Below are positions 1-60,489 of a stretch of DNA of 64,000 nt, piece after piece. Numbering within the stretch: position 1 is the first letter of the stretch; each line of letters starts with the position of its first letter. Position numbers and translations under genes: made by a program. The notes below the pieces were generated by a model. That model made no database searches and was not told the DNA's origin. It was given only the letters and a program-made list of their open reading frames with translations. Source of the DNA: Pristiophorus japonicus (Eukaryota); assembly GCF_044704955.1 (NCBI RefSeq), contig NC_091989.1, positions 104,222,001-104,286,000 of the forward strand, written 5' to 3'.

Positions 1-1
1 C

Positions 2-781: not shown

Positions 782-875
782 GAAAAAGGCCATCTTCTCG
801 CTGAAGAACTGTACCTGCTCTTGTATTAAATTAAATATTTGGACTTGAAAGTACTGCCCAAAAGTTCAGCAACGG

Positions 876-1031
876 ATGTCAGAGCTCATTTGTGTGCCAG
901 TTTGGGCCTTTATTATTTGGGTCACTGTTACTATCGTGTGGACGTGTTGTTATTGTAACGACTTAATTCAAGAGTGGTATAGAAACAAACAAGAAAGGGA
1001 AGATGGGACGGGACTCTTGGAAAAATTATAA
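876..1031 (+). CDS. Putative 51-aa retroviral accessory membrane protein between pol and env
   Basis: ATG 876 to TAA 1031: MSELICVPVWAFIIWVTVTIVWTCCYCNDLIQEWYRNKQEREDGTGLLEKL. Hydrophobic N-terminal helix, charged tail, overlaps the env start by 29 nt. Below the ORF-track size cut-off. Confidence 0.6.
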   Translation: MSELICVPVWAFIIWVTVTIVWTCCYCNDLIQEWYRNKQEREDGTGLLEKL

Positions 1032-6188: not shown

Positions 6189-6500
6189 CTGCCCCAATCC
6201 CACTGAAGATTGTTTCCGGGAGAACTGAAGGAATTTCATCTGCGTCTCTGACTCTTGTGTGTAAAAAGACTGCGTGCTATCCGAAGAATTTCACCCTCGC
6301 TTGGTATAAAAATGGCATCGAAACTGCATTAGCAATAGATACCAATAAAGTGCAGAACACGGAGGGACTGTATGAAGTTTCCTGCTCTTTGGCTGAGATG
6401 CAGCCTATCCCGAGCGACGCCAATTATACCTGTTTAGTATCTCATGTCTCCCTCCAGACTCCAGCTGTGGTCACATATACTGTTTCTAAATCTAACCAGG
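6189..6500 (+). CDS. Copy A: intact Ig C1-set exon of a VJ-C1 (SIRP-like) receptor
   Basis: Acceptor ttccgcag|, donor G|gtatgt, phase 1-1, 312 nt, open. APIPLKIV...LTLVCKKTACYPKNFTLAWYKNG...GLYEVSCSL...YTCLVSHVSLQTP has both Cys, the Trp and the C1 YxCxVxH motif. Paralogous to 17601 and 41415. Confidence 0.9.
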
Positions 6501-6725
6501 GTATGTGCACTACAGTCCAAAAAGGTGAAACAGCTACTGTTATATTCGTAAAGCGATATATCTTACAGTTTGTACATGCTGACAATCATATAGTCCACAG
6601 AAGTCCCATTGGAGATATCAATGAAAGCATTAAATTCACGTTTTAATATATAACTGATTCACACATATATTCACAGTCAAACCTAATTTGCTTTCCAATT
6701 CCTCTACTTGATGTATGACAAATAT

Positions 6726-6860
6726 AAGAACATAAGAACATGAGAACATAAGACATAGGAACAACAGTAGCCCATACGGCCCATCGAACCTGCTCCACCG
6801 TTCAATTTCATCATGGCTGATCTTCTACCGCAACTCCATATTCCCGTCCTAGTCTCATTC
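6726..6860 (-). mobile_element. CR1/SINE 3' tail fragment
   Basis: (aagaacat)n followed by the reverse complement of the CR1 3' UTR. Confidence 0.8.
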
Positions 6861-6937
6861 TGTTCAATGTATCAGTTGTGTGTAAACTGGTGAAGGCAAT
6901 GTAACAGGCACATAACAAAGTATTTTAGCCCATGTAG

Positions 6938-7285
6938 GAAGCAAAGGCTGAAAGCGCTAATATGCAGCAGTAGATCTGAGCAGAACTATATAAACTCCAA
7001 GACTTAAACTTAAACTGGAGAGGGCCGAGGGCTGAGAAGCGGATCAGACAGACGCAGTAGCACCAACATTCATGCGACAACGGAGAATACAACGTTGGCT
7101 GACTCTAGTCGTGTATTGTAGCTCAGGCAGTTTGTATGTTGTTCTGATGGCTACTTTGAGCAGCTGCCAGGAAACTGGTAAAACGACCAATTAACAATCT
7201 TTCTAAACACAGCTTTAGTGAGCAAACAAGGGACCATCGCGACTCTAGAAATGTCAGGGTCCAAAATTCAAATGAAAACAGCGTC
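6938..7285 (+). pseudogene. Copy A: decayed remnants of the two ITIM-bearing cytoplasmic exons
   Basis: Aligns by eye to 19302-19700. Acceptor cccatgtag is kept; YAAVDLSR motif has a frameshift and stop; the donor is lost; the VTY segment of the last exon is deleted. AATAAA at 7371-7376. Confidence 0.75.
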
Positions 7286-9937
7286 ATTATTCCTGTATTA
7301 TATCATATAATGTAGCTGTAATTTTATGTTATCACTTCAATATTTGAGGAATTTTCATTTCATTACTTGTAATAAAATGATCATTGCTTCTACATTTTTG
7401 ATCAATCTGTAGTACTTAATAGATGACAAATATCTGCAATAATACGCTATTTCCTTTTCTGCATCGAGCTACGATCATGCATAAATTCAATAAAAATAAT
7501 ACTAATAGATTTCTCTCCCTCAGCAATCAACCATTCGTGATTTTCTTTGCGCGTAAAACTACAAAACCCGCGATTTGATGTATCCTGACTTCCAGTGCAG
7601 GCGATTCTCCTGATTTCGACGATCCAGTCTATGAAGTATTCCATAAACTCTCTGAACACAGCTTGCAGATGATGGTGCATGAAAGGCCTTTCTCTAAATT
7701 CTGTATGACTACCCATTCCTATTTGAAACGATGCATCCTGACAACTTCAAGTTGCTATCAAAGGAATGGCCTCGATTATTCTCATTAGATTTTGTCTTCG
7801 AAAGGATTTCTAGAGTATTTCTAGTGAGACGAGCAACAATAATGAATCCGAGATATAGTACTGAAGTTGTGAGAGGTTCCCTACAGAACTGAATGCATTT
7901 TTATTGGAGAAATGTCAGAATTAACGGAGAAGCGGTATTGAAACAGTTCAAAGACGTGGATAATATAAATATTAGCAGCGTGTAAAGTTTGACATGCAAT
8001 CAGAATTAACAAGCCCCAATAAGAGAGTGTAACTACAACAATTTACGTATTTTAGCGGGGCTGCCTCGTCAGCTGAAATTTAACTAGCCGTTTCCACGAT
8101 TACACTGTGAGTTTTGAGGAAGATCATCACTTGACTTACGGTGTTCAAGTTACTGAAAGAAAGGCAGCCCAACAATTCCAGTGACAAGCTTTAGCTCCGA
8201 ATTTAAGGATAATACAAGACGAAGTGAATCCGTTATATCTTCGGCCGAATTGTTCTGGTTTGATGACTGTGTGCATTAACACGCATTTTATAATCCTGAA
8301 ATGTTAGAGCACAGAATCAGGTCAGGAGGCTCTAAAAGTCGGTACTTTTGTTTCTCCCCATATGCAAAACGTCGTTAGTTCCAATTTACTTTTATATTTC
8401 TATTATCTTCAATATACCTCTTTTTCAAGCAGCTAATTCACTTCTAAAATAATTGCTGGGCAGTGATTCAACAACATTCTGTGGCAGAGAACGTCCATAG
8501 TTCATATTCCAACCAGCCTCTGTGCAAAGAGTATTTTACCTCTTTATGTTTTGCGATTATGTTAAAGTTATGCTCACGCGTCACCGTCTACTTGTTGTTG
8601 GAAAAGTTTATCACCATTTGCTTATCATAAAGCCTCATAGTCTTGAAAACCTATATCAGGTCACTCCTCAATCTTTTCACCTTCAGTGAAAAATGCCCAC
8701 GCTTCTCAAAATAATAACCCTCCATACATGATCATTTAGACGCCAACTTTTAATTTGATTTTGTATTCTTCCATAGTTCTACACAAGCTATTACCTCATG
8801 TGAGCATTACCTTCTTGCTTGTGCATGCTATGTCACCAAATTCTAAAGCAAGAACTCCCTTTACACATTTACTGCATAATACATTTATGTTGTCTTCATG
8901 CATTGAGGTCCCTCTATTCCTGTGCACAATTTAAAAGCACAATCAAGATACATTCCTTGTTCCGACTTTTACCTCCACAACTTTGTCATTTCTCATTTAT
9001 CTGCATTCGTCATCAAACATGTATTTGCCCTTCGAGCGAACTATCAATGTCGCCTGCAGCAATTCAGGATCTGCTTCATAATTGTCTTCCCGACTCCCCT
9101 TTAGTTTTCATCTCCAAATTTTTATGTTGTTCCCTCAATTTCTCAACGAGATCATTGATGTATAAAGTAAAAATGTCAGTCTAACTCGGGGTGTCGTGCC
9201 AATCCTAGAAACGTCGTTTTATTCTTAAACTTTTTTGATATTGCCCAACCATCTCCCTGCCCTTTTGCCACGGAGCCCTCACTTCTGTGTGCCTTCTTCA
9301 CATGTGGTACTGCATCAAATGTTGTTTTTAAATCCACATGAACTGCATTTGCTGAATTTCATTTAACTATTTATTTCTTCAGTGAATTCTGTAATTGAAG
9401 CACGATCTGCCTTTTACAAAATTCGTGCTGACTCGGCTTCATTAGCTCAGCATTCTGCAAGAGATTAGCAGATTTATCCCGATTAATACAGGGTCTGCGA
9501 GCTGTAAGTAAATGTATAACTGTTTACCTATGATTATGCTACATTCTATATCACATGATATTTTCTCATCTAATAATAACTCATTGGCTAGGAGATGGAG
9601 ATTAAATCAGCGTGGAGTAGATTACTTAAATGAAAGTAACGTACAGCACACAAAAAAGATGACCATTTGAACGTTCTATCAGTCCTCTGTTCTAGTTGAA
9701 TGAAATATATCAACGGAGATGTTCACCAATCTTCTTTTTTTTAGCTGCACGAGATGTGTTGCTAAATATTGACACGAGCGTATCGTTTTCTCGAGCTAAG
9801 TAAACACCGTGGCTCAGTAGCTCGAAGCACCGACTGTTCAAAGTTTAAATTTAGCTCTGTTAATTGCAACATCATGAACACGCGTTGAGTGTTGAATAAT
9901 AATAAATAGAATTGCAACAACATATGATACTCAGATA

Positions 9938-11612
9938 CTCTAGTAAAGAGGAGGAACTGAGGGAAATCCTTATTAGCCGGGAAATTGTGTTGGGGAAATT
10001 GATGGGATTGAAGGCCGATAAATCCCCAGGGCCTGATGGACTGCATCCCAGAGTACTTAAGGAGGTGGCCTTGGAAATAGCGGATGCATTGACAGTCATT
10101 TTCCAACATTCCATTGACTCTGGATCAGTTCCTATGGAGTGGAGGGTAGCCAATGTAACCCCACTTTTTAAAAAAGGAGGGAGAGAGAAAACAGGGAATT
10201 ATAGACCGGTCAGCCTGACATCGGTAGTGGGTAAAATGATGGAATCAATTATTAAGGATGTCATAGCAGTGCATTTGGAAAGAGGTGACATGATAGGTCC
10301 AAGTCAGCATGGATTTGTGAAAGGGAAATCATGCTTGACAAATCTTCTGGAATTTTTTGAGGATGTTTCCAGTAGAGTGGATAAGGGAGAACCAGTTGAT
10401 GTGGTATATTTGGACTTTCAGAAGGCGTTCGACAAGGTCCCACACAAGAGATTGATGTGCAAAGTTAGAGCACATGGGATTGGGGGTAGTGTGCTGACAT
10501 GGATTGAGAACTGGTTGTCAGACAGGAAGCAAAGAGTAGGAGTAAATGGGTACTTTTCAGAATGGCAGGCAGTGACTAGTGGGGTACCGCAAGGTACTGT
10601 GCTGGGGCCCCAGCTGTTTACACTGTACATTAATGATTTAGATGAGGGGGTTAAATGTAGTATCTCCAAATTTGCGGATGACCACTAAGTTGGGTGGCAG
10701 TGTGAGCTGCGAGGAGGATGCTGTGAGGCTGCAGAGCGACTTGGATAGGTTAGGTGAGTGGGCAAATGCATGGCAGATGAAGTATAATGTGGATAAATGT
10801 GAGGTTATCCACTTTGGTGGTAAAAACAGAGAGACAGACTATTATCTGAATGGTGACAGATTAGGAAAAGGGGAGGTGCAAAGAGACCTGGGTGTCATGG
10901 TACATCAGTCATTGAAGGTTGGCATGCAGGTGCAGCAGGCGGTTAAGAAAGCAAATGGCATGTTGGCCTTCATAGCAAGGGGATTTGAGTACAGGGGCAG
11001 GGAGGTGTTACTACAGTTGTACAGGGCATTGGTGAGGCCACACCTGGAGTATTGTGAACAGTTTTGGTCTCCTAACCTGAGGAAGGACATTCTTGCTATT
11101 GAGGGAGTGCAGTGAAGGTTCACCAGACTGATTCCCGGGATGGCGGGACTGACCTATCAAGAAAGACTGGATCAACTGGGCTTGTATTCACTGGAGTTCA
11201 GAAGAATGAGAGGGGACCTCATAGAAACATTTAAAATTCTGACGGGGTTAGACAGGTTAGATGCAGGAAGAATGTTCCCAATGTTGGGGAAGTCCAGAAC
11301 CAGAGGTCACAGTCTAAGGATAAGGGGTAAGCCATTTAGGACCGAGATGCGGAGGAACTTCTTCACCCAGAGAGTGGTGAACCTGTGGAATTCTCTACCA
11401 CAGAAAGTTGTTGAGGCCAATTCACTAAATATATTCAAAAAGGAGTTAGATGAGGTCCTTACTACTAGGGGGATCAAGGGGTATGGCGAGAAAGCAGGAA
11501 TGGGGTACTGAAGTTGAATGTTCAGCCATGAACTCATTGAATGGCGGTGCAGGCTAGAAGGACCGAATGGACTACTCCTGCACCTATTTTCTATGTTTCT
11601 ATGTTTCTATGT
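9938..11612 (+). mobile_element. Young 5'-truncated CR1 LINE (RT and 3' UTR)
   Basis: Near-continuous ORF2 with one frameshift (about 10682) and one TGA (11113); tail (TTTCTATG)x3. Confidence 0.97.
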
Positions 11613-16027: not shown

Positions 16028-16088
16028 ATGTTGTGGACTGTGATCGTTTTGTTCCTGTTCCTGTCTCTCCCGGGGATCATTTACACAG
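16028..16088 (+). CDS. Copy B exon 1: leader / signal peptide
   Basis: MLWTVIVLFLFLSLPGIIYT plus a phase-1 donor (ACAG|gtgcct) matching the phase-1 V acceptor 182 nt downstream. Confidence 0.85.
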
Positions 16089-16270: not shown

Positions 16271-16588
16271 CTGCGAGTACTTCGATCAGCGTGTTTCAAA
16301 CTCCCGAACAAGTAATTCAATTAAGAGGAACAAACATCACCTTCCACTGTGTAATCCCCCTTTCTCATGACAATTCTGGGGTAGAAGTGCTTTGGTGGAA
16401 ACAGGGTGAGAATGAATATCTACAAACAGGAGCCGATAAAAGAAAACGAGTTGGTGTCAAAAATAAAGGAGGCGGTTTCTTTGAGTTGCTGAACCTGACG
16501 ATCCAGGACACTGGATTCTATCATTGCGCAGTGATCCGACTGGGAAGAATTATTGGAAATGGAACAGGATCACACCTAACTGTAGGCG
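16271..16588 (+). CDS. Copy B exon 2: Ig V-set domain with germline-joined J-like segment
   Basis: Phase 1-1, 318 nt, open. SVFQTPE...ITFHC...LWWKQ...ELLNLTIQDTGFYHCAV...IGNGTGSHLTVG; donor G|gtaagt. Confidence 0.93.
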
Positions 16589-17600
16589 GTAAGTGACCGG
16601 AGTGAGCGGGAAGGTCCACATGTATCAAATGTAACAAGGATGATGTTTTGTCATTGTTTCATTGTATCGTCTTTGATATAATAAAACAATTATATTAAGG
16701 TCTCTGATAAATGAAACTCTGCACACAATTGCTAATTATACGGCACAATATCACGTTTCATTTGCTGAGTTGTGTAAAATGCCATCAATTTTAACCAGAG
16801 TAATTAACACGCTACTAAAGCAATGTACTGAGTATGTTGGAAATCTGAAATTTAAATAAAAAATGTTGGAAATACTCAACAGTTCAAGCAGCATCTGTGG
16901 AGAAGGGAATAAAGTTAACGTTTCAAGTCTATGACCTGTCGCAAGTAGCATGTTACTGGATTCATCTCAAAATTTATTTTTTACATCAGAATTCTGATGA
17001 TGGAAGTTGCGGGACAAATTCCAAATATATTGATTACTGGCTGAAAATCTTTCTTATTAATGCCCCGCTCCCGTCTATTTACACGATTCTTGCTCCATTT
17101 CAGATACTCTGTTTGTCCCCGTCGCTGTAAGTGAGGTTTGACATTCTTCTGAAATTAATGCTAATGTACTGATAGAATGATTCCCGTGACGGACTTCAAA
17201 TCAGATTAACTGTAAATCAATGGATTCACTCAACAAACTAGACCTCGAACCATAATTTTGTCGCGTCTTTCGCCTCCAATAAATGAACCATTCCCAGAGT
17301 CTGTTGTTGCCGCCTTTTGACACTGAAGGGAATGTAATTTCGCAAAGCGGTTATCATGCTCCGGCTGTGTGAGCTGTCCGAAATTCACTTCGGCCCTGCT
17401 TTATTATCGGTAATCGACATATAATATTTATTTCTCTCCTGGGGAGACAGACAGACCTACAGTTAAGAACAAACAGGGAACGACCAGGAATAACATTCTT
17501 CTCCCATAACTTATATGTCATACATTCTCCCCACCATCCCCCCCCCCCCACCCCACCGCCCAACCCAGTAATCTGATTTCCCACATTTTCTGTTCCACAG

Positions 17601-17926
17601 TTGCCCCAACTCCATTGAAGATTGTCTCCAAGACATCCAAGAGCAATTCATCTGCGTCTCTGTCTCTTCTGTGTGAAACGGCGGAGTTTTACCCGGGCGA
17701 TTTAACCTTCGTTTGGTATAAAAATGACACAAAAGCCGCAACTGGGGTTATTTCCAATAAACGGCAGAACACTGAGGGACTGTATGAAATGTCCAGCTCT
17801 TTGGAAGAGACGCAGCCTGAGCCGAACGGGGCAGTTTACATCTGTTATTGACTCATAACACTCTCGGGACACCCGTCATTGCCATCCACACTGTTAGCAA
17901 TTGCGATACAGATACGCGGCCAACAG
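17601..17926 (+). pseudogene. Copy B exon 3: Ig C1-set domain with a 1-bp deletion near 17845
   Basis: Acceptor ttccacag|. LLCETAEFYPGDLTFVWYKND...GLYEMSSSL...VYIC then TGA 17849-51. Adding one T restores CLLTHNTLGTPVIAIHTV and a phase-1 donor CAG|gtgagg at 17926. Confidence 0.88.
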
Positions 17927-18334
17927 GTGAGGTCAGCTACTGTTAAATTCTGAAAAGGTTTTCCTTGATTTGCTGGTATTAATAATCATAAAGATAGTTA
18001 GGAAAACAGCGCCTGGGATATATAAAAGAATAGTCAAAATTGATGTTTCAATATAAAATATTATTGACCGGCACTTGTGTAAAACCAGAAATAATATTAT
18101 CGCCCTTCACCCAGAAACTGCGTGTAAAACTTCGACAGCTTCCAAATTATAAAAACAATATGAGCAGGTGGTGTAGCTCTTCCATCCAATTATTTTACAT
18201 GGCTTGCTTATTATTAAACATTCAAATGTGTCCTCTTGTTAAATTGATTTTATTCTTTCTCATTATCTGGTTTCCTTACATGAGCTGCAGGACTAGATAC
18301 GGCAGTTCTTTTTTCCGCCTTGCGTGTCTCCCAG

Positions 18335-18434
18335 TGCGGCTCCTGATTCCGGCCTCTTTTGGGCGATTCACTCTGAATTGGTCAGGAATTAGCCTTGCGG
18401 ACTGGCTTTAGCGCGAATGCTCCATGATACAAAG
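18335..18434 (+). pseudogene. Copy B: candidate degenerate transmembrane exon
   Basis: GC-rich block after a strong polypyrimidine acceptor (ttttttccgccttgcgtgtctcccag|), ending AAAG|gt like the TM exon of copy C. Only partly hydrophobic and needs frameshifts (VRLLIPASFG...GISL/GLALARMLH). Confidence 0.3.
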
Positions 18435-18674
18435 GTTCGGAGCGAGAACCCGTTTCATACATCTTATTACATAAAATACATGTGCAGTTTATTTTTTCTT
18501 CCTATCTGTAGCGCTCACCTCTTCTCTAAATTGAATTTCAACTGCCATTGCTCTGCCAACTTATATATCTAAAGTCATGTTAAGCTTTACTCTAAAATAG
18601 TTTTGAAAGTGCAAACGTGGAAACTGAATAAACATTTTAAGAATTGAATGTAATTACATTCCATTCATTTCCAG

Positions 18675-18718
18675 GTAAACAAGAAAGTGTAACAATACTA
18701 GGCCCTCGTGAAGAGCTG
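18675..18718 (+). CDS. Copy B: short cytoplasmic exon 1
   Basis: catttccag| ... |gtaggt, 44 nt, phase 1 to 0, (G)KQESVTILGPREEL. Phase fits the next exon and the equivalent exon of copy C. Confidence 0.65.
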
Positions 18719-19301
18719 GTAGGTTCATATCATTTACCTAGGAATAGGGTTCCAATATAAATAAATATTGTTATGATGGGGATTTTTTTCAAAACAAATC
18801 ACACAAGTATTTGTCCCTCTTTGATGTGTCATTGAAATCGTGTTTTCACACTTGTTGTGAAGTAGGTGTAAGTGATTAAAGAAAGAGAAACAACGAAATC
18901 GGTAGCTTCACTTAATATATAACTAGGTAATAATTATATGTGCATCTATCTAACCTTTGCTTTTGGAATTTGCTATTATATGTCTAAGATGCTGAAACTA
19001 CCTCTTGTTTAAACATATCTCTAACACTACTGTAGTGAAAATCGACAGCTTGAAATGTAAATTAAAATGAACACACTATTTACCGGCCTTAACATTCACA
19101 GAAATGTAAATATATTAGAAAGATAGAAAATAGGTGCAGGGGTAGGCCGTTCGGCCCTTCGAGCTTGCACTGCCAAAGCTGCGGTTTCTGCATTTTATTT
19201 GCAGCCCAGGTCATTCTGGTTACTGTTTGATCAGCAGTCTGTAAATTGGTGAAGGCAATGATGAAGCCACATAAAAAAATATTTTGTTTCTGCCCATGCA
19301 G

Positions 19302-19403
19302 GGAGCCAAGGACGACATCGTGGCTTATCCTGCAGTAAATTTGAGCAAAGCCAAGAAAACTCCAAGACGTAAACATGAAGAGGAGAGGACAACGTGCGCT
19401 CAG
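19302..19403 (+). CDS. Copy B: cytoplasmic exon 2 with ITIM
   Basis: cccatgcag| ... CAG|gtgggg, 102 nt, phase 0-0: GAKDDIVAYPAVNLSKAKKTPRRKHEEERTTCAQ; VxYxxV ITIM. Confidence 0.8.
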
Positions 19404-19499
19404 GTGGGGCTGAGAAGTAGATAAGAGAAACATAGGTCACCAGTGAAGCGCCAACATTAATGTAAGAGCGGAGCTTTTGGGGTTGTTCTGACTTTGACC

Positions 19500-19527
19500 G
19501 TGCGTGTGTGTGTGTGTGTGTGTGTGT
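19500..19527. repeat. (GT)n microsatellite in the last intron of copy B
   Basis: Direct read. Confidence 0.95.
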
Positions 19528-19599
19528 TATTCTGACGGCTGCCTTGAGCAAACTGATAAAACGACCAATCAGCAAGATTTCCAAACATTGGCTTTTCAG

Positions 19600-19713
19600 A
19601 TAAAACAAGGGACAGTCCGGGACAAGGTGACCTACTCGACTCTGGAATTGTCTGGCCCCGAAAAAGCGGGAAAATCTAAAAATAATAAAAGCACAGAATA
19701 TACCGAGATATAG
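19600..19713 (+). CDS. Copy B: last coding exon with ITIM and ITSM
   Basis: gcttttcag| IKQGTVRDKVTYSTLELSGPEKAGKSKNNKSTEYTEI*; VTYSTL (ITIM), TEYTEI (ITSM). AATAAA at 19842-47 and about 20054. Confidence 0.85.
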   Translation: MKQGTVRDKVTYSTLELSGPEKAGKSKNNKSTEYTEI

Positions 19714-21744
19714 ACGACAACCCCAAAAGAAGTCACTGATACAAAAATGAAGTAGCATAACAATCTTGAGCAAATGAATCACTTTGTTGGTGTATATTGA
19801 TTTATTCCGAAGCCATATCAACTCCACTGATTTCAATGGAAAATAAAATCTGGCGGTTCCTATAAAGGGCTGAAGATTCGTTGGGTTAGTTTAACGTTCA
19901 AGCAGTGAAAGTGTTAATTATCTCCATGTGCAGGTATATCCGTGTTATCCAATTACCAAGATGTAACACATTTTAGTGTCATAGTATATAATACAGCTAT
20001 GACAATTCTTTAATTATTTGGGGATTATTAGTTAGAAATATGTAGATGTTTGTAATAAAACAATTTTCAATTTAAATCTGCGTTATTTATTATATGACGA
20101 TCCTATACTATTTCAATTAGAATAATAGGCTAACTCACATGCTGTAATTATTTACCATCAGATATATATATATATATGGCTGTCTTACATCTCCCGGTTA
20201 AAATTCAGCGATAACACATAAGATACATATGTATGGGAAGGGAACGAAACGGCAAAAACTTGAGTGCTGACTTCACGAGTTGTGGCACTGTAAACAGCTT
20301 CTATTCCAGGCGATGCTAAAGGGGTGGAGGACATGAACTCGTCCATAAACTGTCTGAACTTAATTGGCGTTACAGGAGGCACACTTGCTGAACTCTGTGA
20401 TGTCTACCAATTTCTTTCCTTGTAGAAAAGATGGATTAAACCATGATCTAGGTTTTTTTTTAATCGCCAACCTTCCCAATTGAGATATAAGCAGGCTGTT
20501 TGATTTAAACCCTTAACATGCAAAAAAAGTTCGATTCTAACAAGCCTAAATGAAGAAGGGCATTGAACTTCAAATACACACTCATTTTAGAGTGGTTCCC
20601 GTGTCAGGAAAGAGACAACCCGTGGTTTAAAATGTTAAATTGAGATCTATTTGGGAAGTAGATCAATCAAATTACAGGGTTAGAAGATTGCGCAACTGAT
20701 ACCAGAAGAACACTAGTCCAGCAGTTCCAGTGACCAAGTGGATTGCGAATTTGATCCCCAATCGAAAGACCATCCAAGATGAAATTAATTAGTTGACTCT
20801 TGCTTCGTGCAACTGTGATGTTTGGTTGACTGTGTGCATTATCAAGCAGGAGGATCGGCACAGTACCAAGTGTTTTAGAATCCTGGAATGTTAGAGATTA
20901 GAAACCGGCCATTCACGAACAGAGACTGAAACATTGTCTTTCTCCACATGACCCATGTAGTTTAATTCTATATTCCTCTTCGCTCTTCACAATCTTAAAT
21001 GTTCCACTTATTCATGCAATTCCTTCCCAATGAAAAAGATGATCTGCTTCAACAACGGAATGTGGCAGACTACTCCAAATTCACACACTCTAACCATGGT
21101 CTCTGTAAAGAGTATGTTGCATCCCCATTTTGAGATTATGTAAAATGTACGGCTTCTTGTTACCGTCCACCGGCGAATGGTAATAATTCAATAATCCTTC
21201 ACAAACTTAAATGCGCGTCATTAATCTTCTCAACTGCGTTGATGAAAGCCCTAGCTTCTCGCGTCTCTCCATAACATTAACCACACTTTCCTGGTAATAC
21301 AGTAGCTAACCTATGCTGCACGCTTTCCATGTTTTTCTATCCTTCTTGTGATGGGATGATCATATCAAATCACACCAATTACAATTTAAATAAACTCAAA
21401 TACAACATTACCTCTATGGTTTTCCATTTTATTCTCCTAGACAGAAACTCAAAGGACTGTGTTCGGCCATTTATGATTTGTATGTCTGCACACCAAGTTG
21501 AAGGAGTGTTTAATTTCTCCGCTTTTAACTCAAAAAATGTATTACTGTAAATTTATCTGACTTTTACATCTATTATCCAGCGATGCCTATCAGTGTTCCA
21601 CTGCAGAATTTCACAAGCTCCATCGAAATCTACATCCTGCTTTTCCCATTAGGCGTTATCTTCAAATTTCGGTGTTAATCCCTCAATTCCCGCCGACCGA
21701 TAATTTATGTGTGCAGTAAATAAAAACAGCCCAAATCAGGTAGC

Positions 21745-27140: not shown

Positions 27141-27673
27141 GATCGGTTGTTGCTTTGTAAATGCACGCTATCAAACATTTCAATTAAGTAAAATCAATCT
27201 TACATTTAATTGTTATTTATTGTTTCAGTTGTTCAGCAAAACCTACATTTCCCCTACAACAGCATTTAATTGCCTCTTAAATGATTTCAGAGCCCCCCCC
27301 CCCCCCACCCCGCATGAGTACCCCAAGTCCTCTTCCATTGTCGATCAGTCTCTGTGTGAAAAAAAGCTTTTCAAGTTCTGTTCTCGGAATGGGTGTCACA
27401 TCTGCAAGGCTGAATTTGTCATGTATCCTACATGGTCACTGCTCGTACTATTACAGGGTGTGCCACTAGAGGGCACTGCAGTGGTAGACTTGCAGGTTTG
27501 CTGTACAGGTATGGCTGGACTAGTATAAAAGGCAGGCCACCATGTGTGATCCTCACTCTGGAGTTATCAATGAAGGATTAAGGTCACTACAGTTCAAGTA
27601 CAACACATTGCCTCGTGGATTCATTATAGGAGCATTTAAAGACATAACAATTGGCGATGAGATTCACGTGAAA

Positions 27674-28900
27674 ATGGCTACCCTTGGTACATTGCAGCAG
27701 TTCGCCGACGGTGATGATTGGGATACCTTTGTGGAGTGGCTCAACCATTTCTTCACAACAAATGACCTAGCAGGCATCAATCCAGCCAAAGTGGCTGATA
27801 AGCGCAGAGCTGTCCTGCTAGCCAGTTGTGGGACCACTGTCTATGGCCTCGTCAGGGACTTGCTGGTACCAGCGAAGACAATGACCAAGACATATGAGGA
27901 GCTTGTAATGCTGATCCAAGAGCAACTCAAGCCGAAAGAGAGCATCCTCACAGTCAGACACCGGTTTTCCACCCATCGATTGCCCAAAGGCCTGGAAATC
28001 ACGAAATATGCTGCAGAACTCAAAAGGCTGGTGGCACCATGTGATTTGGGCAACCACCTCACCGAAGCACTGCAGGACATCTTTGTCATTGGAATCGGCC
28101 ATGATGGCCTGCTTCATAAGCTGTCTGCGGATACCGCAGTGACATCGCAGAAGGCCATTTCCGTGAGCCAGGCATTCATGACCTCGACCTGCGGCTTTAG
28201 GCAGATGAATCATCCTCAAGACTCAAACCCGATAAGTATTGTGCTAGAGTGGTGCCTTTTAGATGTTGGATTATAGAACGTGAACCTTCTCAGGGAAGAG
28301 AGAACAGGCTCCCGAGCCCCTTAACACAGAGTCCGCCGAGGGGGGCTAATCAAGTAGCTCCAGGCTGGCGTTGCAGAAGGAATCACAAGGCTCACCAGTG
28401 CCATTATGTGTGTAAAGGCTGCAGCACAAAGGGCCACCTCCAGCAAATGTGTAAATTAAATATGACTCAATGTATTGATGAAGAGTCTGCAGATGGCCAT
28501 GAATCCAGTGTGGATTATGAAACAATAGGCAGAGAGGCAGCTCAGCCCCACGATGAGGTATATAGCATGGTTTCCTGCATCACCAAGTGTTCCCCATTGA
28601 GGAAGGAAGTCAAGATCAATGGCGTTCCAGTCTTCATGGAAGTGGACGGGGGGCGCGCCAGTCAGTAATGAATCAAGAAGCCTTTGAGAGGCTATGGGAC
28701 AATGAAGCTGAATGATCCAAGTTGGTCCTGGTTCAGGCAAAACTGCGCATCTACACTGATGAACATATCCCAATCATTGGTAGTGCAGATGTAAAGGTAC
28801 TCCATGATGGCATGGTGCAAAAGTTACTTCTGTGGATTGTTGCAGGTGATGGATCAACGCTACTCGGAAGAAGGTGGATGGAGAAGATCCATTGCAGTTG
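27674..28900 (+). pseudogene. gag-pro: Gypsy gag-protease, frameshifted
   Basis: MATLGTLQQFADGDDWDTFVE gag start, zinc knuckle CKGCSTKGHLQQMC, protease region VFMEVD... and TLLGRRWM; no RT, RNase H or integrase found downstream. Confidence 0.85.
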
Positions 28901-29945
28901 GGAAGCCTTCATCCCTCCAGCGTTCAACGTCCTCCAAGCAAAGAGGCAAAGCAAGCCCTCACCTGACGTTGGATCCAGAACCACAGAGCAGACAAGCACA
29001 GAACCTGAGGCACAGATCACTCAGCATGACTGCGTGGAGATGATCCAGCTGAGACGACCTGAATGCACCTTCCAGGCTCTAGTGGCAGGACTCCGAAAGA
29101 AGAAAATCAGATCCAAAGGCAAGTTCCCAGCTTCAGTAGCAGAAACTGGGGAGAAGAGGATCACCGCAGTCGACATCGTGGAGGGAGGAAAGATGGCACC
29201 AAAACCACGAGGTGATGTGCTGAAGAAAAAGATGGCGCCGGCCAAACCACAAGGTGCAGTGCTGATGGAGCAACACGTGGCACCAAACGGAGAAGAGGAT
29301 TGAGGTAAAGGAGGCCTGCAAACTACCACAGTTAAAGGGACAGTTCCACATTTTCAATCAATGTAGGAGCAACTGTGAGTTAGATATAAAATGTGCAATT
29401 GATGAACAGAATTGGTCATGCAATAAGCAAAGAAAAGTCTCAATGTAATAGCAACTGTGTTAGATGTAAGATGTGTAATTGATGATCAGAGCTATGCCCA
29501 TGCAATAAGCAAAGAAAAGGCGCGCAATCGCGATCGGAGTTACATGTTATTTACAATGAGTAATGAAACATTGTGCCATGTAGGATTCCAACAGCATACA
29601 GTCAATTCAGCGGGCAGACACCCATTGGGAGCACACAGGTCCAGCGAGCTATCCAATATAGTAGACTGCATCTCTGGGACCAGAGTTATGCACCATGGAG
29701 TGTGGTCACAAGCAGCCAATACATACAAGCTGCAGAGCAAGCGATTTCAGGAGCGCAATGGCAATGGTATCGATACCCTGCCCCTGATCAGCTCCATCTC
29801 TCAGACACCCAATGGCATCAACCACCATGAGCCTGAAAGAGCAAACTGAGCTAAGGCGCAGCCCCCAGACCCTATCACCACCAAGGCCATACCCGGCAAT
29901 GAATGGTCTCCCGCAACGGGTCTCCCAAATGGGACCAGGAGCAGC

Positions 29946-32660
29946 CAGGATAGATAGATTCAGGAAGGATAGAATAAAAGGAAAAGGAGGTGGGGTAGCA
30001 TTGCTGGTTAAAGAGGAGATTAATGCAATAGTTAGGAAGGACATTAGCTTGGATGATGTGGAATCTATATGGGTAGAGCTGCAGAACACCAAAGGGCAAA
30101 AAACGTTGGTGGGAGTTGTGTACAGACCTCCAAACAGTAGTAGTGATGTTGGAGAGGGCATCAAATAGGAAATTAGGGGTGCATGCAATAAAGGTGCAGC
30201 AGTTATCATGGGTGACTTTAATATGCATATAGATTGGGCTAACCAAACTGGAATAAATACGGTGGAAAAGGATTTCCTGGAGTGCATAAGGGATGGTTTT
30301 CTAGACCAGTTTGTCGAGGAATGAACAAGGGGGGAGGCCATCTTAGACTGGGTGTTGTGTAATGAGAGAGGATTAATTAGCAATCTCGTTGTGCGAGTTC
30401 ACTTGGGGAAGAGTGACCATAATATGGTGGAATTCTATATGAAACAGTTAATTCAGAGACCATGGTCCAGAACATAAAGAATGGTAACTTTGAAGGTATG
30501 AGGCGTGAATTGGCTAGGATAGATTGGTGAATGCTGTCATAAGGGATTGACAGTGGATGGGCAATGGCAGACATTTAGAGACCGCATGGATGAACTACAA
30601 CAATTGTACATCCCTGTCTGGCATAAAAATAAAAAAGGGAAGGTGGCTCAACCGTGGCTATCAAGGGAAATCAGGAATAGTATTAAGGCCAAGGAAGTGG
30701 CATACAAATTGGCCGGAAATAGCAGCGAACCCGGGGACTGGGAGAAAATAGAACTCAGCAAAGGAGGACAAAGGGTTTGATTAGGGCAGGGAAAAGAGAG
30801 TACGAAAGGAAGCTTGCAGGGAACATTAAGATGGACTGCGAAAGCTTCTATAGATATGTAAAAAGAAAAAGGTTAGTAAAGACAAACGTAGGTCCCCTGC
30901 AGTCATAACGGGGAACAAAAAAATGTCAGACCAATTGAACAAGTACTTTGGTTAGGTATTCACTAAGGAGGACACAAACAACCTTCCGGATATAAAAGAG
31001 GTCAGAGGGTCTAGTAAGAAGGAGGAACTGAGGGAAATCCTTATTAGTCGGGAAATTGTGTTGGGGAAATTGATGGGATTGAAGGCCGATAAATCCCCAG
31101 GGCCTGATGGACTGCATCCCAGATTACTTAAGGAGATGGTCTTGGAAATAGCGGATGCATTGACAGTCATTTTCCAACATTCCATAGACTCAGTATCAGT
31201 TCATATGGAGTAGAGGATAGCCAATGTAACCCCACTTTTTAAAAAAGGAGGGAGAGAGAAAACAGGGAATTATAGACCGGTCAGCCTGACATGGGTAGTG
31301 GGTAAAATGATGGAATCAATTATTAAGGATGTCATAGCAGCACATTTGGAAAGAGGTGACATGATAGGTCCAAGTCAGCATGCTTGAAAGGGAAATCATG
31401 CTTGACAAATCTTCTCAAAATATTCCAGGATGTTTCCAGTAGAGTGGACAAGGGAGAACTAGTTGATGTGGTGTATTTGGACTTTCAGAAGGCTTTCAAC
31501 AAGGTCCCACATAAGAGATTAATGTACAAAGTTAAAGCTAATGAGATTCGGGGTAGTGTGCTGACGTGGATTGAGAACTGGTTGTCAGACAGGAAGCAAA
31601 GAGTAGAGATAAATGGGTACTTTTCAGAATGGCAGGCAGTGACTAGTGGGGTACCGCAAGGTTCTGTGCTGGGGCCCCAGCTGTTTACATTATACATTAA
31701 TGATTTAGATGAGGGGATTAAATGTAATATCTCCAAATTTGCAGATGACACTAAGTTGGGTGGCAGTGTGAGCTGTGAGGAGGATGCTTTGAGGCTGCAG
31801 AGTGACTTGGATACATTAGGTGAGTGGGCAAATGCATGGCAGATGAAGTATAATGTGGATAAATGTGAGGTTATCCACTTTGGTGGTAAAACCAGAGAGA
31901 CAGACCATTATCTGAATGGTGACAGGTTAAGAAAAGGGGAGGTGCAATGAGACCTGGGTGTTATCGAAGTAATTGAAGGTTGGCATTCAGGCACAGCAGG
32001 CGGTTAAGAAAGCAAATGGCATGTTTGCCCTCATAGCGAGGGGATTTGAGACAGGGGCAGGGAGGTGTTACTACAGTTTTACAGGGCTTTGGTGAGGCCA
32101 CACCTGGAGTATTGTGTACAGTTTTGGTCTCCTAACTTGAGGAAGGACATTCTTGCTGTTGAGGGAGTGCAGCGAAGGTTCACCAGACTGATTCCCGGGA
32201 TAGCAAGACTGACATATCAAGAAAGACTGGATCAACTGGGCTTGTAGTCACTGGAGTTCAGAAGAATGAGAGGGGATCTCATAGAAATGTTTAAAATTCT
32301 GACAGGTTTAGACAGGTTAGATGCAGGAAGAATGTTCCCAATGTTGGGGAAGTCCAGAACCAGGGGTCACAGTCTAAGGATAAGGGGTAAGCCATTTAGG
32401 ACCGAGATGAGGAGAAGCTTCTTCACCCAGAGAGTGGTGAAACTGTGGAATTCTCTACCACAGAAAGTTGTTGAGGCCAATTCACTAAATATATTCAAAA
32501 AGGAGTTAGATGTAGTCCTTACTACTAGGGGGATCAAGGGGTATGGCGAGAAAGCAGGAATGGGATACTGAAGTTGCATGTTCAACCATGAACTCATTGA
32601 ATGGCGGTGCAGGCTCGAAGGGCTGAATGGACTACTCCTGCACCTATTTTCTATGTTTCT
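29946..32660 (+). mobile_element. CR1 LINE (endonuclease part, RT, tail) inserted inside the Gypsy element
   Basis: RKDRIKGKGGGVALLV, VYRPP, GDFN endonuclease motifs; RT motifs; TTTCTATG tail at about 32648-32663. Confidence 0.96.
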
Positions 32661-33984
32661 ATGGATCCCAAACCAAACAACGCTGAGGCAAGCAAGTCAG
32701 CAGTTCCCCGTGCACTGCTAGGCGACAGCTCCTCAGGGCGCAGCAGGACAGGGACAGGGAGGTCACAGGCATCTGTGAACCTGCCCAATACTAGGGGCAA
32801 TGGCGAAAGCCTCGAGAGCAGGCAACTTGAGCCAGCCGGGTTTCCACTGCCAGCACGGGGCACCGCGCCACCACCAGACTACCTGGACACCATCCAGCAG
32901 TTCTGGAACTTGCTTGTCCCTACGCACCAGTGCTGACACCTGTACTGATTCCGAGTATGTTTCAAGAATGTATCTCACCAGTCGAATGTACTTGCCTCAC
33001 AACTGCACCACAACTGTAATGATGTTAATGCAATTTTTTTCTGGACTTGAATTTATATGAATGTAATGAGCCTCTGGCAAAATCTATATGTGGAGAGGGG
33101 GGAGAGAATGGATTGGTCATGGACACACAAACAGAAACCACTGATATCCTACTGCCAATGAAACACCAACCACTCACCTTTGATAGAAACGGCCCGCCAA
33201 GGGTCAACCAGATAGAGCTAAGCCCAGGGTACAGTCAATGCAGAGGCGATTTGAATTAAAGGCTTGCGGGAGACTGATGTCATGTATCCTACATGATCAC
33301 TGCTTGTACTATTACAAGGTGTGCCACCAGAGGGCACCGCAGTGGGAGACTTGCAGATTACCTGTACAGGTGTGCCTGGCCTAGTATAAAAGACAGGCCA
33401 CCATGTGTGATCCTCATTCTGGAGTTATCAATAAAGGGCTAAGGTCACTACAGTTCAAGTACAACACATTGCCTCGTGGAGTCATTATCAGAGCATCTAA
33501 AGACGTAACAGAATTAATTACCCATTCCTAATTGCATTATACAAAGTAGCGGTGGCTTTTTCTTGAACTGCTACAATCTTTATGCGGATGGTTTGGTAGG
33601 AGATTCTAGCATATAGATGCAAAGTTGATAAAGGGATGGCAATGTATAGCCAAGTCAGGATGGTTTGTGACTTGGAGAAGAATTTGGAGATGATTACATT
33701 CCCATGATGTTGCTGCTCTCATCCTGCTCGTTGGTAGAGATATAAGAGCTGGGATCTGTTGCTCAAGAAGAACTTCCTTACATCAGTCCTTATTTGGCTT
33801 GCCTCCCGGTAGCCAGGTAATAGATTTACTTTACACAGCGTTTGGTAACGATAGTCAGCAGCCTGACTTTTAAACAGTCCGCCTGAAATTTCACTCACCA
33901 TTGTATTTTCGTTTATTTGAAATAAACATTTGAAGCTGAGAATTGTAAGATATATGAGTCCTGCGTGGGTACAATTGTTTTAAT

Positions 33985-38132: not shown

Positions 38133-38421
38133 CTGCGGTTACTCTGTTTCAAGTAACCCAAGCCCTGAAAATACCATTTCGATCGCTGGTACAAACATTG
38201 TCTTCAATTGCACATTTACTACCTTGCAGCACGATTCTGATATGAATATTTATTGGTGGAAACTTGGCAAAAAAGAATTGATACAACCAGACATCAGAAA
38301 ACGACTGCTTACTTCGAACTCGAGAATATCAGCGTCCGGAACTCTGAAGTTTATCACTGCGGAATGACACGTCAGAGAAACAGGTTCGTAAATGAAAGCG
38401 GATCAAACCTTGTCGTCAAAG
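38133..38421 (+). pseudogene. Copy C: VJ exon, pseudogene
   Basis: Across frameshifts: FQVTQ/SPENTISIAGTNIVFNC...IYWWKLG...DIRKR/AYFELENISVRNSEVYHCG...VNESGSNLVVK, donor G|gtaaga. Internal deletion, acceptor lost. Clearly paralogous to 16271-16588. Confidence 0.88.
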
Positions 38422-41414: not shown

Positions 41415-41725
41415 CTCCCCCAACTCCCCTGAGGATTGTTTCCAAAGCATCGGAAATTAATGTATTCGGTTCTTTGACTCTCGTGTGAGTAATGGCTTGA
41501 TTTTACCCGGATGAACTGGCTATCACTTGGTACAAAAATAATGGCAGTATTGAGACCAAAATACATACTACTAAGCAGCTCAGCAGAGCTGGGATGTATG
41601 AAGCTCCAGCTATTTTGCAGAGGCACAGCCTGTCCAAGGAGGAACTGTTTATGTTTATCTGGTTTCTCACGTGACCCTCCAGTTTCCAGCCATGGCAATT
41701 TACTTGGTCCCAAATTCTAACTCAG
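41415..41725 (+). pseudogene. Copy C: C1 exon, pseudogene
   Basis: PPTPLRIVSK...LTLV*VMA*FYPDELAITWYKNN...GMYE/...VYVYLVSHVTLQFPA. Both Cys lost (TGA, TAT), two stops, a frameshift, donor GT>GG. Confidence 0.9.
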
Positions 41726-59760: not shown

Positions 59761-60489
59761 CACTACAATTAAAATGCAGCCGGAAACTGGAGTCAGGGCT
59801 AATGGGTATAAATTCTTCATCTCCGGTAGTGGATAAACGGGCAACAGCACAACGTCAGCGCATTTTGCACCCTGCCTGATTTTTCTTTGCATTTATTTCA
59901 ATGGAAAAATAATCGGGTGGAGTGCAAAGCAGACTGTCGATTCACTATCGCTCATTTTTCCCAGCTGCACAAGACGAATGTATAACCAAATATGACACTG
60001 GGGTCGACTGAGTTTCTGTGATATGAAAAATCGGACAGGGTGCATATTCGGTGGCCGACGTTCCACCGCCCATTCTGCGCTCCCATGAAGATTGAATTTC
60101 ACTCCCTCAGTTGCTGTCAGATCAAAGTGATTGCTGCAGCAGATTGCAGCCCAGAGAGTAAATCCAGTCTTCAGTGGTTCTCGTTGCAAAGGCAAATTGA
60201 GCAAGGATTCGGGAAGAAAAATATAATTAGATCTAAAATTGTGCCCCAATTGGCTGCTGTACTTGGGATTAGATTGAAGGTATTTTAGCCACTTCAGATT
60301 TGCCAAAACTATTTTATGTGTATGTTTGATGGTACCATGATACTAATAAACAAAATAATTTGAATATGATTTTGAATGGATAAGTGTGCCCTCTAGACCT
60401 AAATTGAACTCGGAATTGATTGCCTCGTATTCCCATTGGTAACGTTTGAAAGCGTAGTTTACCACAAGTAATCCGGAAAGCAAATAGAA

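What the first reader, a model, noticed from the sequence alone, without database searches (positions are those of the whole stretch)
18675..19713. SIRP-alpha-like four-motif inhibitory tail built from a duplicated ITIM-ITSM module
Seen: the spliced tail reads ...DDIVAYPAVNLSKAKKTPRRKHEEERTTCAQ|IKQGTVRDKVTYSTLELSGPEKAGKSKNNKSTEYTEI*. The two halves look like copies of one VxYxx(V/L)xLS-basic-TxYxxI module, with motif spacing 23/14/22 aa. Known (recalled): human SIRP-alpha has ITYADLNLPKGKKP...TEYASI...LTYADL...SEYASV with similar spacing and recruits SHP-1/2. Inference: a SHP-recruiting inhibitory receptor, raising the question of a CD47-like self ligand in this lineage.
Basis: partly seen in the sequence, partly recalled or inferred. 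Interest (0 to 1): 0.8.

Follow-up and report, generated by a model that had tools for sequence, protein, structure and literature searches.

The report
Broken shark SIRP-like receptor gene tail
The tail exons are real and belong to a shark, ray and chimaera family of antibody-like "off-switch" receptors that databases already predict, but this copy is broken: it has a frameshift, no membrane anchor, and has lost one of its four signalling tyrosines.

Summary
They match the cytoplasmic tails of a large cartilaginous-fish family built as leader, V(J), C1, TM and tail. The closest relative is a Heterodontus francisci protein (78% identity in the V exon).

In that family the tail carries four or more tyrosines at a fixed 23/14/23 spacing, and its two halves are clearly copies of one module.

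Three corrections apply:
- The window copy has only three tyrosines.
- The gene is broken. The C1 exon is one base short at its conserved Cys codon, and no transmembrane exon is recognisable.
- "SIRP-alpha-like" is a resemblance, not shown membership. There is one C1 domain instead of two, only cartilaginous-fish relatives were found, and database names for the family are inconsistent.

No RNA evidence was obtained. Two further decayed copies lie in the window.

This scan had already noted the same family on other DNA of this genome, one intact gene and one dead copy. Verdict: an ordinary gene relic of a family already predicted in databases. The tail architecture is of some interest only at family level.

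The parts
16028..16088 (+). Leader exon of copy B (MLWTVIVLFLFLSLPGIIYT, ends in phase 1)
   Evidence: Sequence read; aligns at 72% with the leader of the H. francisci relative P0001.
16271..16588 (+). V(J) exon of copy B, intact (318 nt, phase 1/1), with both Cys, WWK and the J-like motif GNGTGSHLTV
   Evidence: Pfam V-set 1.4e-8. 78% identity to P0001, E 2.4e-47, with 173 relatives at E<=1e-3.
17601..17926 (+). C1 exon of copy B, frameshifted: 326 nt, one short of a multiple of 3. The frame breaks at the conserved Cys codon (17843-17845), giving YIC-Y-stop. The remainder, LLTHNTLGTPVIAIHTV, is in the next frame.
   Evidence: Pfam C1-set 1.7e-8 for the first 81 codons. Family proteins align across the break in two frames. 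A contig of DNA run X1 shows the reference letters here.
18291..18436 (+). Only candidate exon between the C1 exon and exon A (AG acceptor, GT donor, 3' end reads ..YK|G like the family's K-G junction). It has stop codons in all three frames. Possibly a relic of the TM exon, but this is unproven.
   Evidence: No significant alignment to family TM segments. The family TM profile scores 0 bits or less across 17927-19301 but 13-63 bits for seven of eight held-out relatives.
18675..18718 (+). Cytoplasmic exon A (xKQESVTILGPREEL, phase 1 to 0)
   Evidence: Too short for a homology test; its phase fits exon B.
19302..19403 (+). Cytoplasmic exon B = tail module 1: ITIM VAYPAV, then RTTCAQ where the family has RTVYAQ (Tyr to Cys)
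   Evidence: Module-1 profile 36.4 bits. tblastn E 1e-7 against the window. Tyr at this position in 13 of 13 family tails.
19600..19713 (+). Cytoplasmic exon C = tail module 2: ITIM VTYSTL, 22 residues, ITSM TEYTEI, then stop (TAG 19711-19713)
   Evidence: Module-2 profile 44.8 bits. 61% identity to the Pristis relative P0009 over its best 28 residues; 47% over 57 residues when the alignment is extended.
19842..19847 (+). AATAAA about 130 nt after the stop codon, a possible polyadenylation signal
   Evidence: Read; not tested.
6189..6500 (+). Copy A: intact C1 exon (312 nt), 53% identical to copy B and 65% to a Mustelus relative
6928..7259 (+). Copy A: decayed remnants of tail exons B and C. 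The exon B remnant reads ..YAAVDLSRTI*TPRL.. with stops and a lost donor. The exon C remnant (7224-7259) has a deletion that removes the VTY tyrosine.
   Evidence: blastn 19211-19613 against 6855-7234, 66% identity; tblastn; sequence read.
38143..38417 (+). Copy C: V exon split over two frames (frameshift)
41420..41724 (+). Copy C: C1 exon with two in-frame stops (..LTLV*VMA*FYPDEL..) and a frame change

Best explanation
Positions 16.0-19.7 kb hold a decaying copy (a pseudogene or null allele) of a multigene family found in sharks, rays and chimaeras. Intact members encode a leader, a germline-joined V(J) domain, one C1 domain, a transmembrane segment and a cytoplasmic tail. The tail is built from repeats of a roughly 37-residue module: an ITIM (L/V-x-Y-A-x-L), then 23 residues to a second tyrosine (RTVYAQ in module 1, TEYAE-I/L/V in module 2), then 14 residues to the next ITIM. 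By analogy with SIRP-alpha, PD-1, BTLA and CD33-type Siglecs, intact members would be phosphorylated by Src-family kinases and bind the tandem SH2 domains of SHP-1/2. This step is inferred, not shown. In the window copy the leader, V exon and three tail exons are still open and correctly spliceable. The C1 exon has lost one base at its conserved Cys codon, no TM exon is recognisable, and the second tail tyrosine has become Cys.
For: The exon structure and phases are typical of Ig-superfamily genes, with canonical splice sites. The V exon has 78% identity to H. francisci XP_067904999.1, and 68 relatives score E<=1e-10; every named relative scoring better than about E 1e-8 is from cartilaginous fish. 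Relatives show V-C1-TM-tail with tyrosine spacing 23/14/23 in Callorhinchus, Pristis (22/14/23), Heptranchias, Mobula and Heterodontus. Exons B and C match the family module profiles at 36.4 and 44.8 bits, and the modules cross-hit at up to 68 bits. The C1 exon is 326 nt and its frame breaks at the Cys codon. A contig of DNA run X1 agrees with the reference there. The TM profile scores 13-63 bits in seven of eight held-out relatives and 0 or less in 17927-19301. No hydrophobic open stretch in that interval is compatible with splicing. The motif-2 position is Tyr in 13 of 13 family tails and Cys here. Two neighbouring copies are also decayed. Another agent reported an intact gene and a dead copy of this family elsewhere in this genome (not checked by me).
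Against: The leader, V exon and all three tail exons (85 codons) are still open with intact splice sites, so any decay is recent or partial. The DNA runs come from one sample, probably the one that was assembled, so they give no independent check of the one-base loss. Run X4 shows a variant at least 90% alike with an extra G at 17848 that restores the frame (C-L-V-I-H). An intact allele or close paralogue therefore exists, and the window may represent one haplotype. TM exons are short and poorly conserved; one held-out relative (P0020) scored only 1.3 bits with the TM profile, so a very divergent anchor could be missed. No RNA data were available.
Confidence: 0.8

Rival explanations
1. The gene is a working inhibitory receptor. 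On this view the C1 frameshift is an assembly or haplotype artefact, or is avoided by skipping the C1 exon as in the V-TM-tail isoforms of Callorhinchus, and a divergent TM exon was overlooked.
For: Open leader, V and tail exons with good splice sites. A read variant with a restored frame exists at 17848. V-TM-tail relatives without C1 carry the same tail (P0157, P0007). Skipping a phase 1/1 C1 exon would keep the frame.
Against: The X1 contig confirms the reference at the break. Nothing in 17927-19301 resembles a TM segment by profile or by hydrophobicity in a frame compatible with splicing. Joining V directly to exon A would give a secreted protein carrying a useless tail. The otherwise invariant second tyrosine is lost. 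The neighbouring copies are dead.
Confidence: 0.1
2. The family, and so this copy, is the true cartilaginous-fish orthologue of tetrapod SIRP-alpha. It shares tail ancestry and binds a CD47-like self ligand.
For: Both have a V(J)-C1 ectodomain. SIRP-alpha (2wng, E 4.7e-29, V plus first C1 aligned as one stretch) and SIRP-gamma (1.3e-25) appear with UrIg2 as the non-antibody hits in the top 60 of a family profile search of solved structures. The tail tyrosine spacing of 23/14/23 compares with 24/17/26 in human SIRP-alpha. Many members carry the NCBI name 'SHPS-1-like'.
Against: One C1 domain instead of two. Ig heavy chains and UrIg2 score higher than SIRP-alpha. The V exon alone does not list SIRP among its best 60 solved structures. 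Tail-only and profile searches found no tetrapod or teleost SIRP, though the word index is insensitive. Database names are inconsistent. ITIM-to-ITSM pairs about 20-25 residues apart also occur in PD-1, BTLA and CD33-type Siglecs (from my own knowledge), so convergence on tandem-SH2 binding is plausible. No synteny could be tested.
Confidence: 0.2
3. The motifs are chance matches in non-coding DNA.
For: ITIM-like strings are short and common.
Against: Profile scores of 36 and 45 bits to family tails from distant species, correct order, spacing and phases, and a position downstream of homologous V and C1 exons.
Confidence: 0.01

Closest known systems
Predicted cartilaginous-fish V-C1 receptors, e.g. 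H. francisci XP_067904999.1, Pristis pectinata XP_051884095.1 and Callorhinchus milii XP_007902825/XP_007902824. NCBI names them SHPS-1-like, SIRP-beta-1-like, tapasin-related-like, CD276 homolog and others.
   Same: Homologous leader, V(J), C1 and tail exons. Same tail modules, order and spacing.
   Different: The window copy has a frameshifted C1 exon, no recognisable TM exon, and Cys in place of the second tail tyrosine.
Mammalian SIRP-alpha (SHPS-1, PTPNS1)
   Same: V(J) domain followed by C1-set domain(s), and a tail with tyrosines in two ITIM-type pairs at similar spacing. Human Y429/453/470/496 are 24/17/26 apart, against 23/14/23 in the family.
   Different: SIRP-alpha has two C1 domains. 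No orthology, synteny, SHP binding or CD47 binding was shown. The V domain is not specifically SIRP-like by sequence. This copy has three tyrosines.
UrIg / UrIg2 (non-rearranging shark VJ-C1 genes; PMC12227049)
   Same: A germline-joined VJ exon followed by C1-type domains in elasmobranchs. UrIg2 is the best solved-structure match of the copy A C1 exon (4.8e-11) and second for the family profile (6e-36).
   Different: [quoted passage not shown] Here there is one C1 domain and an ITIM/ITSM tail.
PRARP (chicken non-rearranging VJ-C1 genes; Fu et al. 2019, J Immunol 202:1992, cited in PMC10751288)
   Same: From my memory of the abstract only: VJ, C1, TM and a tail with an ITIM. That is the same domain order with a single C1.
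   Different: Not testable here. The paper and its sequences are not held, and no bird PRARP was identified among the hits.
Other receptors with ITIM-ITSM pairs (PD-1, BTLA, CD33-type Siglecs, CEACAM1)
   Same: An ITIM followed about 20-25 residues later by T-x-Y-x-x-V/I near the C-terminus. This comes from my own knowledge; PD-1 and BTLA motifs are mentioned in PMC11599192 and PMC12765318.
   Different: Different ectodomains (no C1-set domain) and a single pair rather than repeated modules.

Membership tests
Cartilaginous-fish V-C1 ITIM/ITSM receptor family (database-predicted) | V-set exon with a J-like motif, homologous to family members | tested here: met
   Pfam V-set 1.4e-8. 78% identity, E 2.4e-47 to P0001, with 68 relatives at E<=1e-10.
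Cartilaginous-fish V-C1 ITIM/ITSM receptor family (database-predicted) | One intact C1-set exon | tested here: not met
   The exon is homologous (C1-set 1.7e-8; 55-62% identity to relatives) but is 326 nt long with a frame break and stop at the Cys codon.
Cartilaginous-fish V-C1 ITIM/ITSM receptor family (database-predicted) | Transmembrane segment between C1 and the tail | tested here: not met
   The family TM profile scores 0 bits or less in 17927-19301 against 13-63 bits in seven of eight held-out relatives. No usable hydrophobic ORF was found.
Cartilaginous-fish V-C1 ITIM/ITSM receptor family (database-predicted) | Tail of repeated modules with tyrosines spaced 23/14/23 | tested here: met
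   Exon B scores 36.4 bits and exon C 44.8 bits against the module profiles. Spacing is 23/14/22. The second position is Cys instead of Tyr, which is Tyr in 13 of 13 relatives.
SIRP family (SIRP-alpha type) | Ectodomain of one V-set and two C1-set domains | tested here: not met
   There is only one C1 exon between the V and tail exons. Most relatives also have one C1.
SIRP family (SIRP-alpha type) | Sequence relationship to SIRP ectodomains closer than to other VJ-C1 proteins | tested here: inconclusive
   The family profile hits SIRP-alpha 2wng at 4.7e-29 and SIRP-gamma at 1.3e-25, but Ig heavy chains and UrIg2 score higher. The V exon alone lists no SIRP in its best 60. No phylogeny was made.
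SIRP family (SIRP-alpha type) | Four cytoplasmic tyrosines forming two SHP-binding pairs | tested here: not met
   This copy has three tyrosines, with Cys at the second position. Intact relatives have four or more. Human positions are taken from PMC12765318.
SIRP family (SIRP-alpha type) | Binding of SHP-1/SHP-2 after phosphorylation | not testable with these tools
   Needs biochemistry. Only the consensus fit was checked: VAYPAV and VTYSTL fit ITIM, TEYTEI fits ITSM.
SIRP family (SIRP-alpha type) | CD47 as ligand | not testable with these tools
   No ligand data are available, and no CD47 search was possible in this genome.
SIRP family (SIRP-alpha type) | Orthology by synteny and intron positions | not tested
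UrIg / UrIg2 | VJ followed by many C1-type domains (nine in nurse shark UrIg2) | tested here: not met
   One C1 exon here, compared with the description in PMC12227049.

The most novel reading that the evidence does not exclude
At family level, the four-tyrosine tail is conserved from chimaeras to sharks and rays, with fixed 23/14/23 spacing and module duplication up to eight motifs. It could be homologous to the tetrapod SIRP-alpha tail (24/17/26). That would place a SIRP-type receptor, a VJ-C1 ectodomain with a double SHP-binding tail, in the ancestor of jawed vertebrates. Papers held here call the origin of SIRPs unknown (PMC9652883) or assign the family to Tetrapoda (PMC13262535). The window copy would then be a dead member of the oldest known SIRP lineage.
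Probability: 0.25. Interest if true: 0.55.

Novelty: new member of a known kind. Interest (0 to 1): 0.25.

Why it matters
For this locus it matters little. It is one more decayed copy in a repeat-rich cluster of a receptor family that annotation pipelines already predict in many cartilaginous fishes, and that this scan has already met twice in the same genome.

The family is worth a proper study. It joins an antigen-receptor-like VJ-C1 ectodomain to a tandemly duplicated inhibitory tail whose tyrosine spacing has been held for over 400 million years. It carries contradictory database names, and I found no paper in the held library that describes it. Settling whether it is sister to SIRPs, to UrIg or PRARP, or an independent lineage would bear on the origin of SIRP/CD47-type self-recognition and of non-rearranging antigen-receptor relatives.

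The natural Tyr-to-Cys change here has no functional weight unless the copy is expressed.

Tried and rejected
I stopped typing sequences and repeated the work from window coordinates.

2. The spliced tail was never joined.

3. The word search with the V exon found nothing because of its length limits. The full scan then found the family.

4. A tail-only word search with the Callorhinchus protein P0010 and a profile word search found only cartilaginous-fish proteins. They gave no real SIRP-alpha sequence for a residue-by-residue tail comparison. Only tyrosine positions from a paper could be compared.

5. My by-eye alignment of the candidate exon 18291-18436 with family TM segments was not supported by Smith-Waterman scores or by the TM profile. 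It is kept only as a possible relic.

No orthologous DNA, intron positions or synteny could be compared.

7. Sequencing runs: four DNA runs came from one sample. Three small runs of the same species label held only repeats, so there is no expression evidence either way.

8. The bacterial promoter and terminator scan downstream of the stop was irrelevant to a vertebrate gene.

9. The papers on PRARP (Fu 2019), UrIg (Flajnik 2023) and Dornburg & Yoder 2022 are not held.

10. UrIg membership was rejected on domain number.

Full report
**What is in the sequence**

A 44-nt exon at 18675-18718 reads xKQESVTILGPREEL in phase 1. All three have AG acceptors and GT donors. An AATAAA lies about 130 nt after the stop.

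Upstream on the same strand I found the rest of an Ig-superfamily gene, which I call copy B:
- A leader exon at 16028-16088.
- An intact V exon at 16271-16588. It has both cysteines, WWK and a J-like GNGTGSHLTV motif (Pfam V-set 1.4e-8).
- A C1 exon at 17601-17926 (Pfam C1-set 1.7e-8).

All junctions are phase 1, as is usual for such genes.

**Correction to the observation**

The tail has three tyrosines, not four. VAYPAV and VTYSTL fit the ITIM consensus and TEYTEI fits the ITSM consensus. TTCAQI has no tyrosine and cannot be phosphorylated on tyrosine.

**What it belongs to**

A word search with the V exon was blank. A full HMMER scan of 1.84 billion representative proteins gave 173 hits at E<=1e-3 and 68 at E<=1e-10.

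The best hit is Heterodontus francisci XP_067904999.1 (78% identity, E 2.4e-47). Other strong hits come from Pristis, Callorhinchus, Heptranchias, Mustelus, Amblyraja, Chiloscyllium, Scyliorhinus, Mobula, Narcine and Hypanus. Every named hit scoring better than about E 1e-8 is from cartilaginous fish. Beyond that come assorted bird, turtle and teleost Ig receptors.

The full-length relatives are leader, V(J), one C1, TM and tail. Their tails carry tyrosines at a fixed spacing:
- 23/14/23 in Callorhinchus P0010 and P0007.
- 22/14/23 in Pristis P0009.
- 23/14/23/16/22 in P0008.
- Eight motifs running 23/14/23/14 and so on in the Heterodontus protein P0094.

Some members have short tails with no motifs, as in paired receptor families.

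**The tail and its duplication**

I built profiles from 13 family tails. Exon B scores 36.4 bits against module 1, and exon C scores 44.8 bits against module 2. The cross-scores are about 16 bits each. Across the family the two module profiles hit each other's sequences at up to 68 bits.

Within the window copy alone, exon B against exon C gives a local score of 33, which 124 of 20000 shuffles reach.

The second motif is RTVYAQ-like with Tyr in 13 of 13 family tails. The window has RTTCAQ, so the Tyr-to-Cys change is peculiar to this copy.

**Why I think this copy is dead**

- *Frameshift in C1.* The C1 exon is 326 nt, one short of a multiple of three. The frame reads ...NGAVYIC, then Y, then a stop. 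The rest of the domain (LLTHNTLGTPVIAIHTV...) continues in the next frame, overlapping by one T at 17845. Family proteins align across the break in two frames.
- *No membrane anchor.* Between the C1 exon and exon B there is no usable transmembrane exon. The only stretch with an acceptor and a donor (18291-18436) has stops in all frames. A profile of the family TM and juxtamembrane region scores 13-63 bits in seven of eight relatives left out of the model, but 0 bits or less anywhere in 17927-19301. The hydrophobic open stretches there lie in a polypyrimidine tract, in AT-rich intron sequence out of phase, or in a repeat. The 3' end of 18291-18436 reads ..YK|G, like the family's K-G exon junction, so it may be the relic of the TM exon. 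Alignment scores do not support this.
- *Lost tyrosine.* The otherwise invariant second tyrosine has been replaced by Cys.
- *Decayed neighbours.* Copy A keeps an intact C1 exon (6189-6500), but its tail remnants carry stops, a lost donor and a deletion of the VTY tyrosine (6928-7259). No V exon for copy A lies in the window. Copy C has a frameshifted V exon (38143-38417) and a C1 exon with two stops (41420-41724). The rest of the window is LINE reverse-transcriptase fragments, a retrovirus-like element and a gag-like element.

**Reads**

Four DNA runs from one sample hold the stretch. A contig of run X1 shows the reference letters at the frameshift. A contig of run X4 is at least 90% alike but has A>T, T>G and an inserted G at 17847-17848, which would restore the frame as C-L-V-I-H. 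A variant of exon C reads ..TAQDKVTYAILEL and keeps its tyrosine.

An intact allele or close paralogue therefore exists in the same animal. I could not tell which of the two it is. The runs are probably from the assembled individual, so they are not independent support. Three small runs with the same species label cover only repeats, so there is no evidence about expression.

**Comparison with known families**

NCBI names many relatives [quoted passage not shown] (SIRP-alpha) or "SIRP-beta-1-like". Others in the same family are named tapasin-related-like, CD276 homolog, Ig lambda-1 light chain-like, NCR3-like, NCR3LG1-like, or class II beta. The names reflect the nearest resemblance, not established orthology.

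A family profile searched against solved structures ranks Ig heavy chains and shark UrIg2 (6e-36) first. SIRP-alpha follows (2wng, 4.7e-29, with V and the first C1 aligned as one stretch), then SIRP-gamma at 1.3e-25. The V exon alone is closest to Robo/DCC Ig domains, shark NAR V domains and an amphioxus VJ-C2 protein, and lists no SIRP in its best 60. The copy A C1 exon is closest to UrIg2 and MHC class II beta.

Human SIRP-alpha tyrosines 429/453/470/496 are 24/17/26 apart (PMC12765318), close to the family's 23/14/23. I could not obtain a real SIRP-alpha tail from any tool for a residue-level test, and sequence from memory is not admissible. ITIM-ITSM pairs at similar spacing occur in unrelated receptors, so convergence on tandem-SH2 binding remains possible.

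SIRP-alpha has two C1 domains and this family has one. UrIg2 has nine C1-type domains, and its paper describes no ITIM. The chicken PRARP genes have, as I recall, the same VJ-C1-TM-ITIM order, but neither the paper nor its sequences were available.

Papers held here say the origin of SIRPs is unknown (PMC9652883) or place the SIRP family at Tetrapoda (PMC13262535). I found no held paper describing this cartilaginous-fish family.

**How it most likely works**

In intact relatives the V(J)-C1 ectodomain would bind an unknown ligand. Src-family kinases would phosphorylate the tail tyrosines. Each ITIM and the tyrosine 23 residues after it would then engage the two SH2 domains of SHP-1 or SHP-2, with extra modules adding valency. 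This is inference from the consensus motifs and from SIRP-alpha, PD-1 and BTLA. Nothing here tests it.

In the window copy the C-terminal pair (VTYSTL, 22 residues, TEYTEI) is complete and the first pair is crippled. Without an anchor and with a broken C1 exon, the locus most likely makes no receptor. Skipping the C1 exon would keep the frame, and V-TM-tail proteins without C1 exist in Callorhinchus. Without a TM exon, though, that route yields only a secreted V domain fused to a tail.

**Limits**

- The joined spliced model was not searched; exons were handled apart.
- Earlier notes of this scan report an intact gene and another dead copy of the same family elsewhere in this genome. They agree with my reading, but I did not check them.

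**Verdict**

The duplication idea is right. "SIRP-like" is a fair description of how the family probably works but is not shown membership. This locus is a gene relic. Interest is low for the locus and moderate for the family.

Noticed in passing
window 17847-17862 and 19616-19644 (reads): The same animal carries a variant at least 90% alike. It has an extra G at 17848 that restores the C1 reading frame (C-L-V-I-H), and exon C changes (V>A, R>Q, S>A, T>I) that keep the VxYxxL tyrosine. It is either an intact allele or a close paralogue; this is unresolved.
   Followed up: partly
window 6189-7259: Copy A has a perfect 312-nt C1 exon, but its tail remnants carry stops, a lost donor and a deletion of the ITIM tyrosine. 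There is no V exon upstream within the window. It looks like a relic rather than the 'soluble decoy' suggested in note s1-877278.
   Followed up: partly
window 38143-38417 and 41420-41724: Copy C is a third family member, with a frameshifted V exon and a C1 exon with two in-frame stops. About 3 kb separate the two exons. No tail or TM exon was detected after it.
   Followed up: partly
window 19116-19175 and 16817-16947: Two short stretches in introns of copy B are extremely high-copy in the DNA runs (summed contig depth above 1,000,000 and about 60,000). The first also matches at least eight other places in the window and is probably the end of a SINE or LINE.
   Followed up: no
window 19505-19530: A (GT)n microsatellite lies in the intron between tail exons B and C. 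The reads tool skipped repeats at 19489-19536.
   Followed up: no
window 19558-19599: The last 14 codons of the intron before exon C, read in exon C's frame, give ..KTTNQQDFQTLAFQ. tblastn lines this up with the family's ..KHQEERTVYAQ, which precedes KQG. It may be a faint relic of the previous module's end from the duplication, or chance.
   Followed up: no
window 1-3150 (+): A retrovirus-like element, with an integrase/pol end (2-778) and env-like ORFs with a membrane-spanning stretch (about 970-3150). Another first-reader note (s1-877279) concerns a small ORF at 876-1031.
   Followed up: no
window 3600-5330, 9900-11500, 29800-32570 (+); 54080-56300, 60460-62100 (-): Many LINE (CR1/L2-type) reverse-transcriptase fragments, most with stops. 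One predicted family protein in the database (P0013) has such a fragment fused to its N-terminus, which is a gene-model artefact.
   Followed up: no
window 27524-29850 (+): Long ORFs with a gag-like zinc knuckle and protease-like sequence from an LTR retrotransposon or retrovirus. A partial second copy lies at about 33385-33530.
   Followed up: no
proteins P0008, P0094, P0056, P0089: Family tails vary in module number, from 2 to 4 or more modules. P0094 contains a perfect 74-residue tandem repeat, so module duplication in these tails is still going on.
   Followed up: partly
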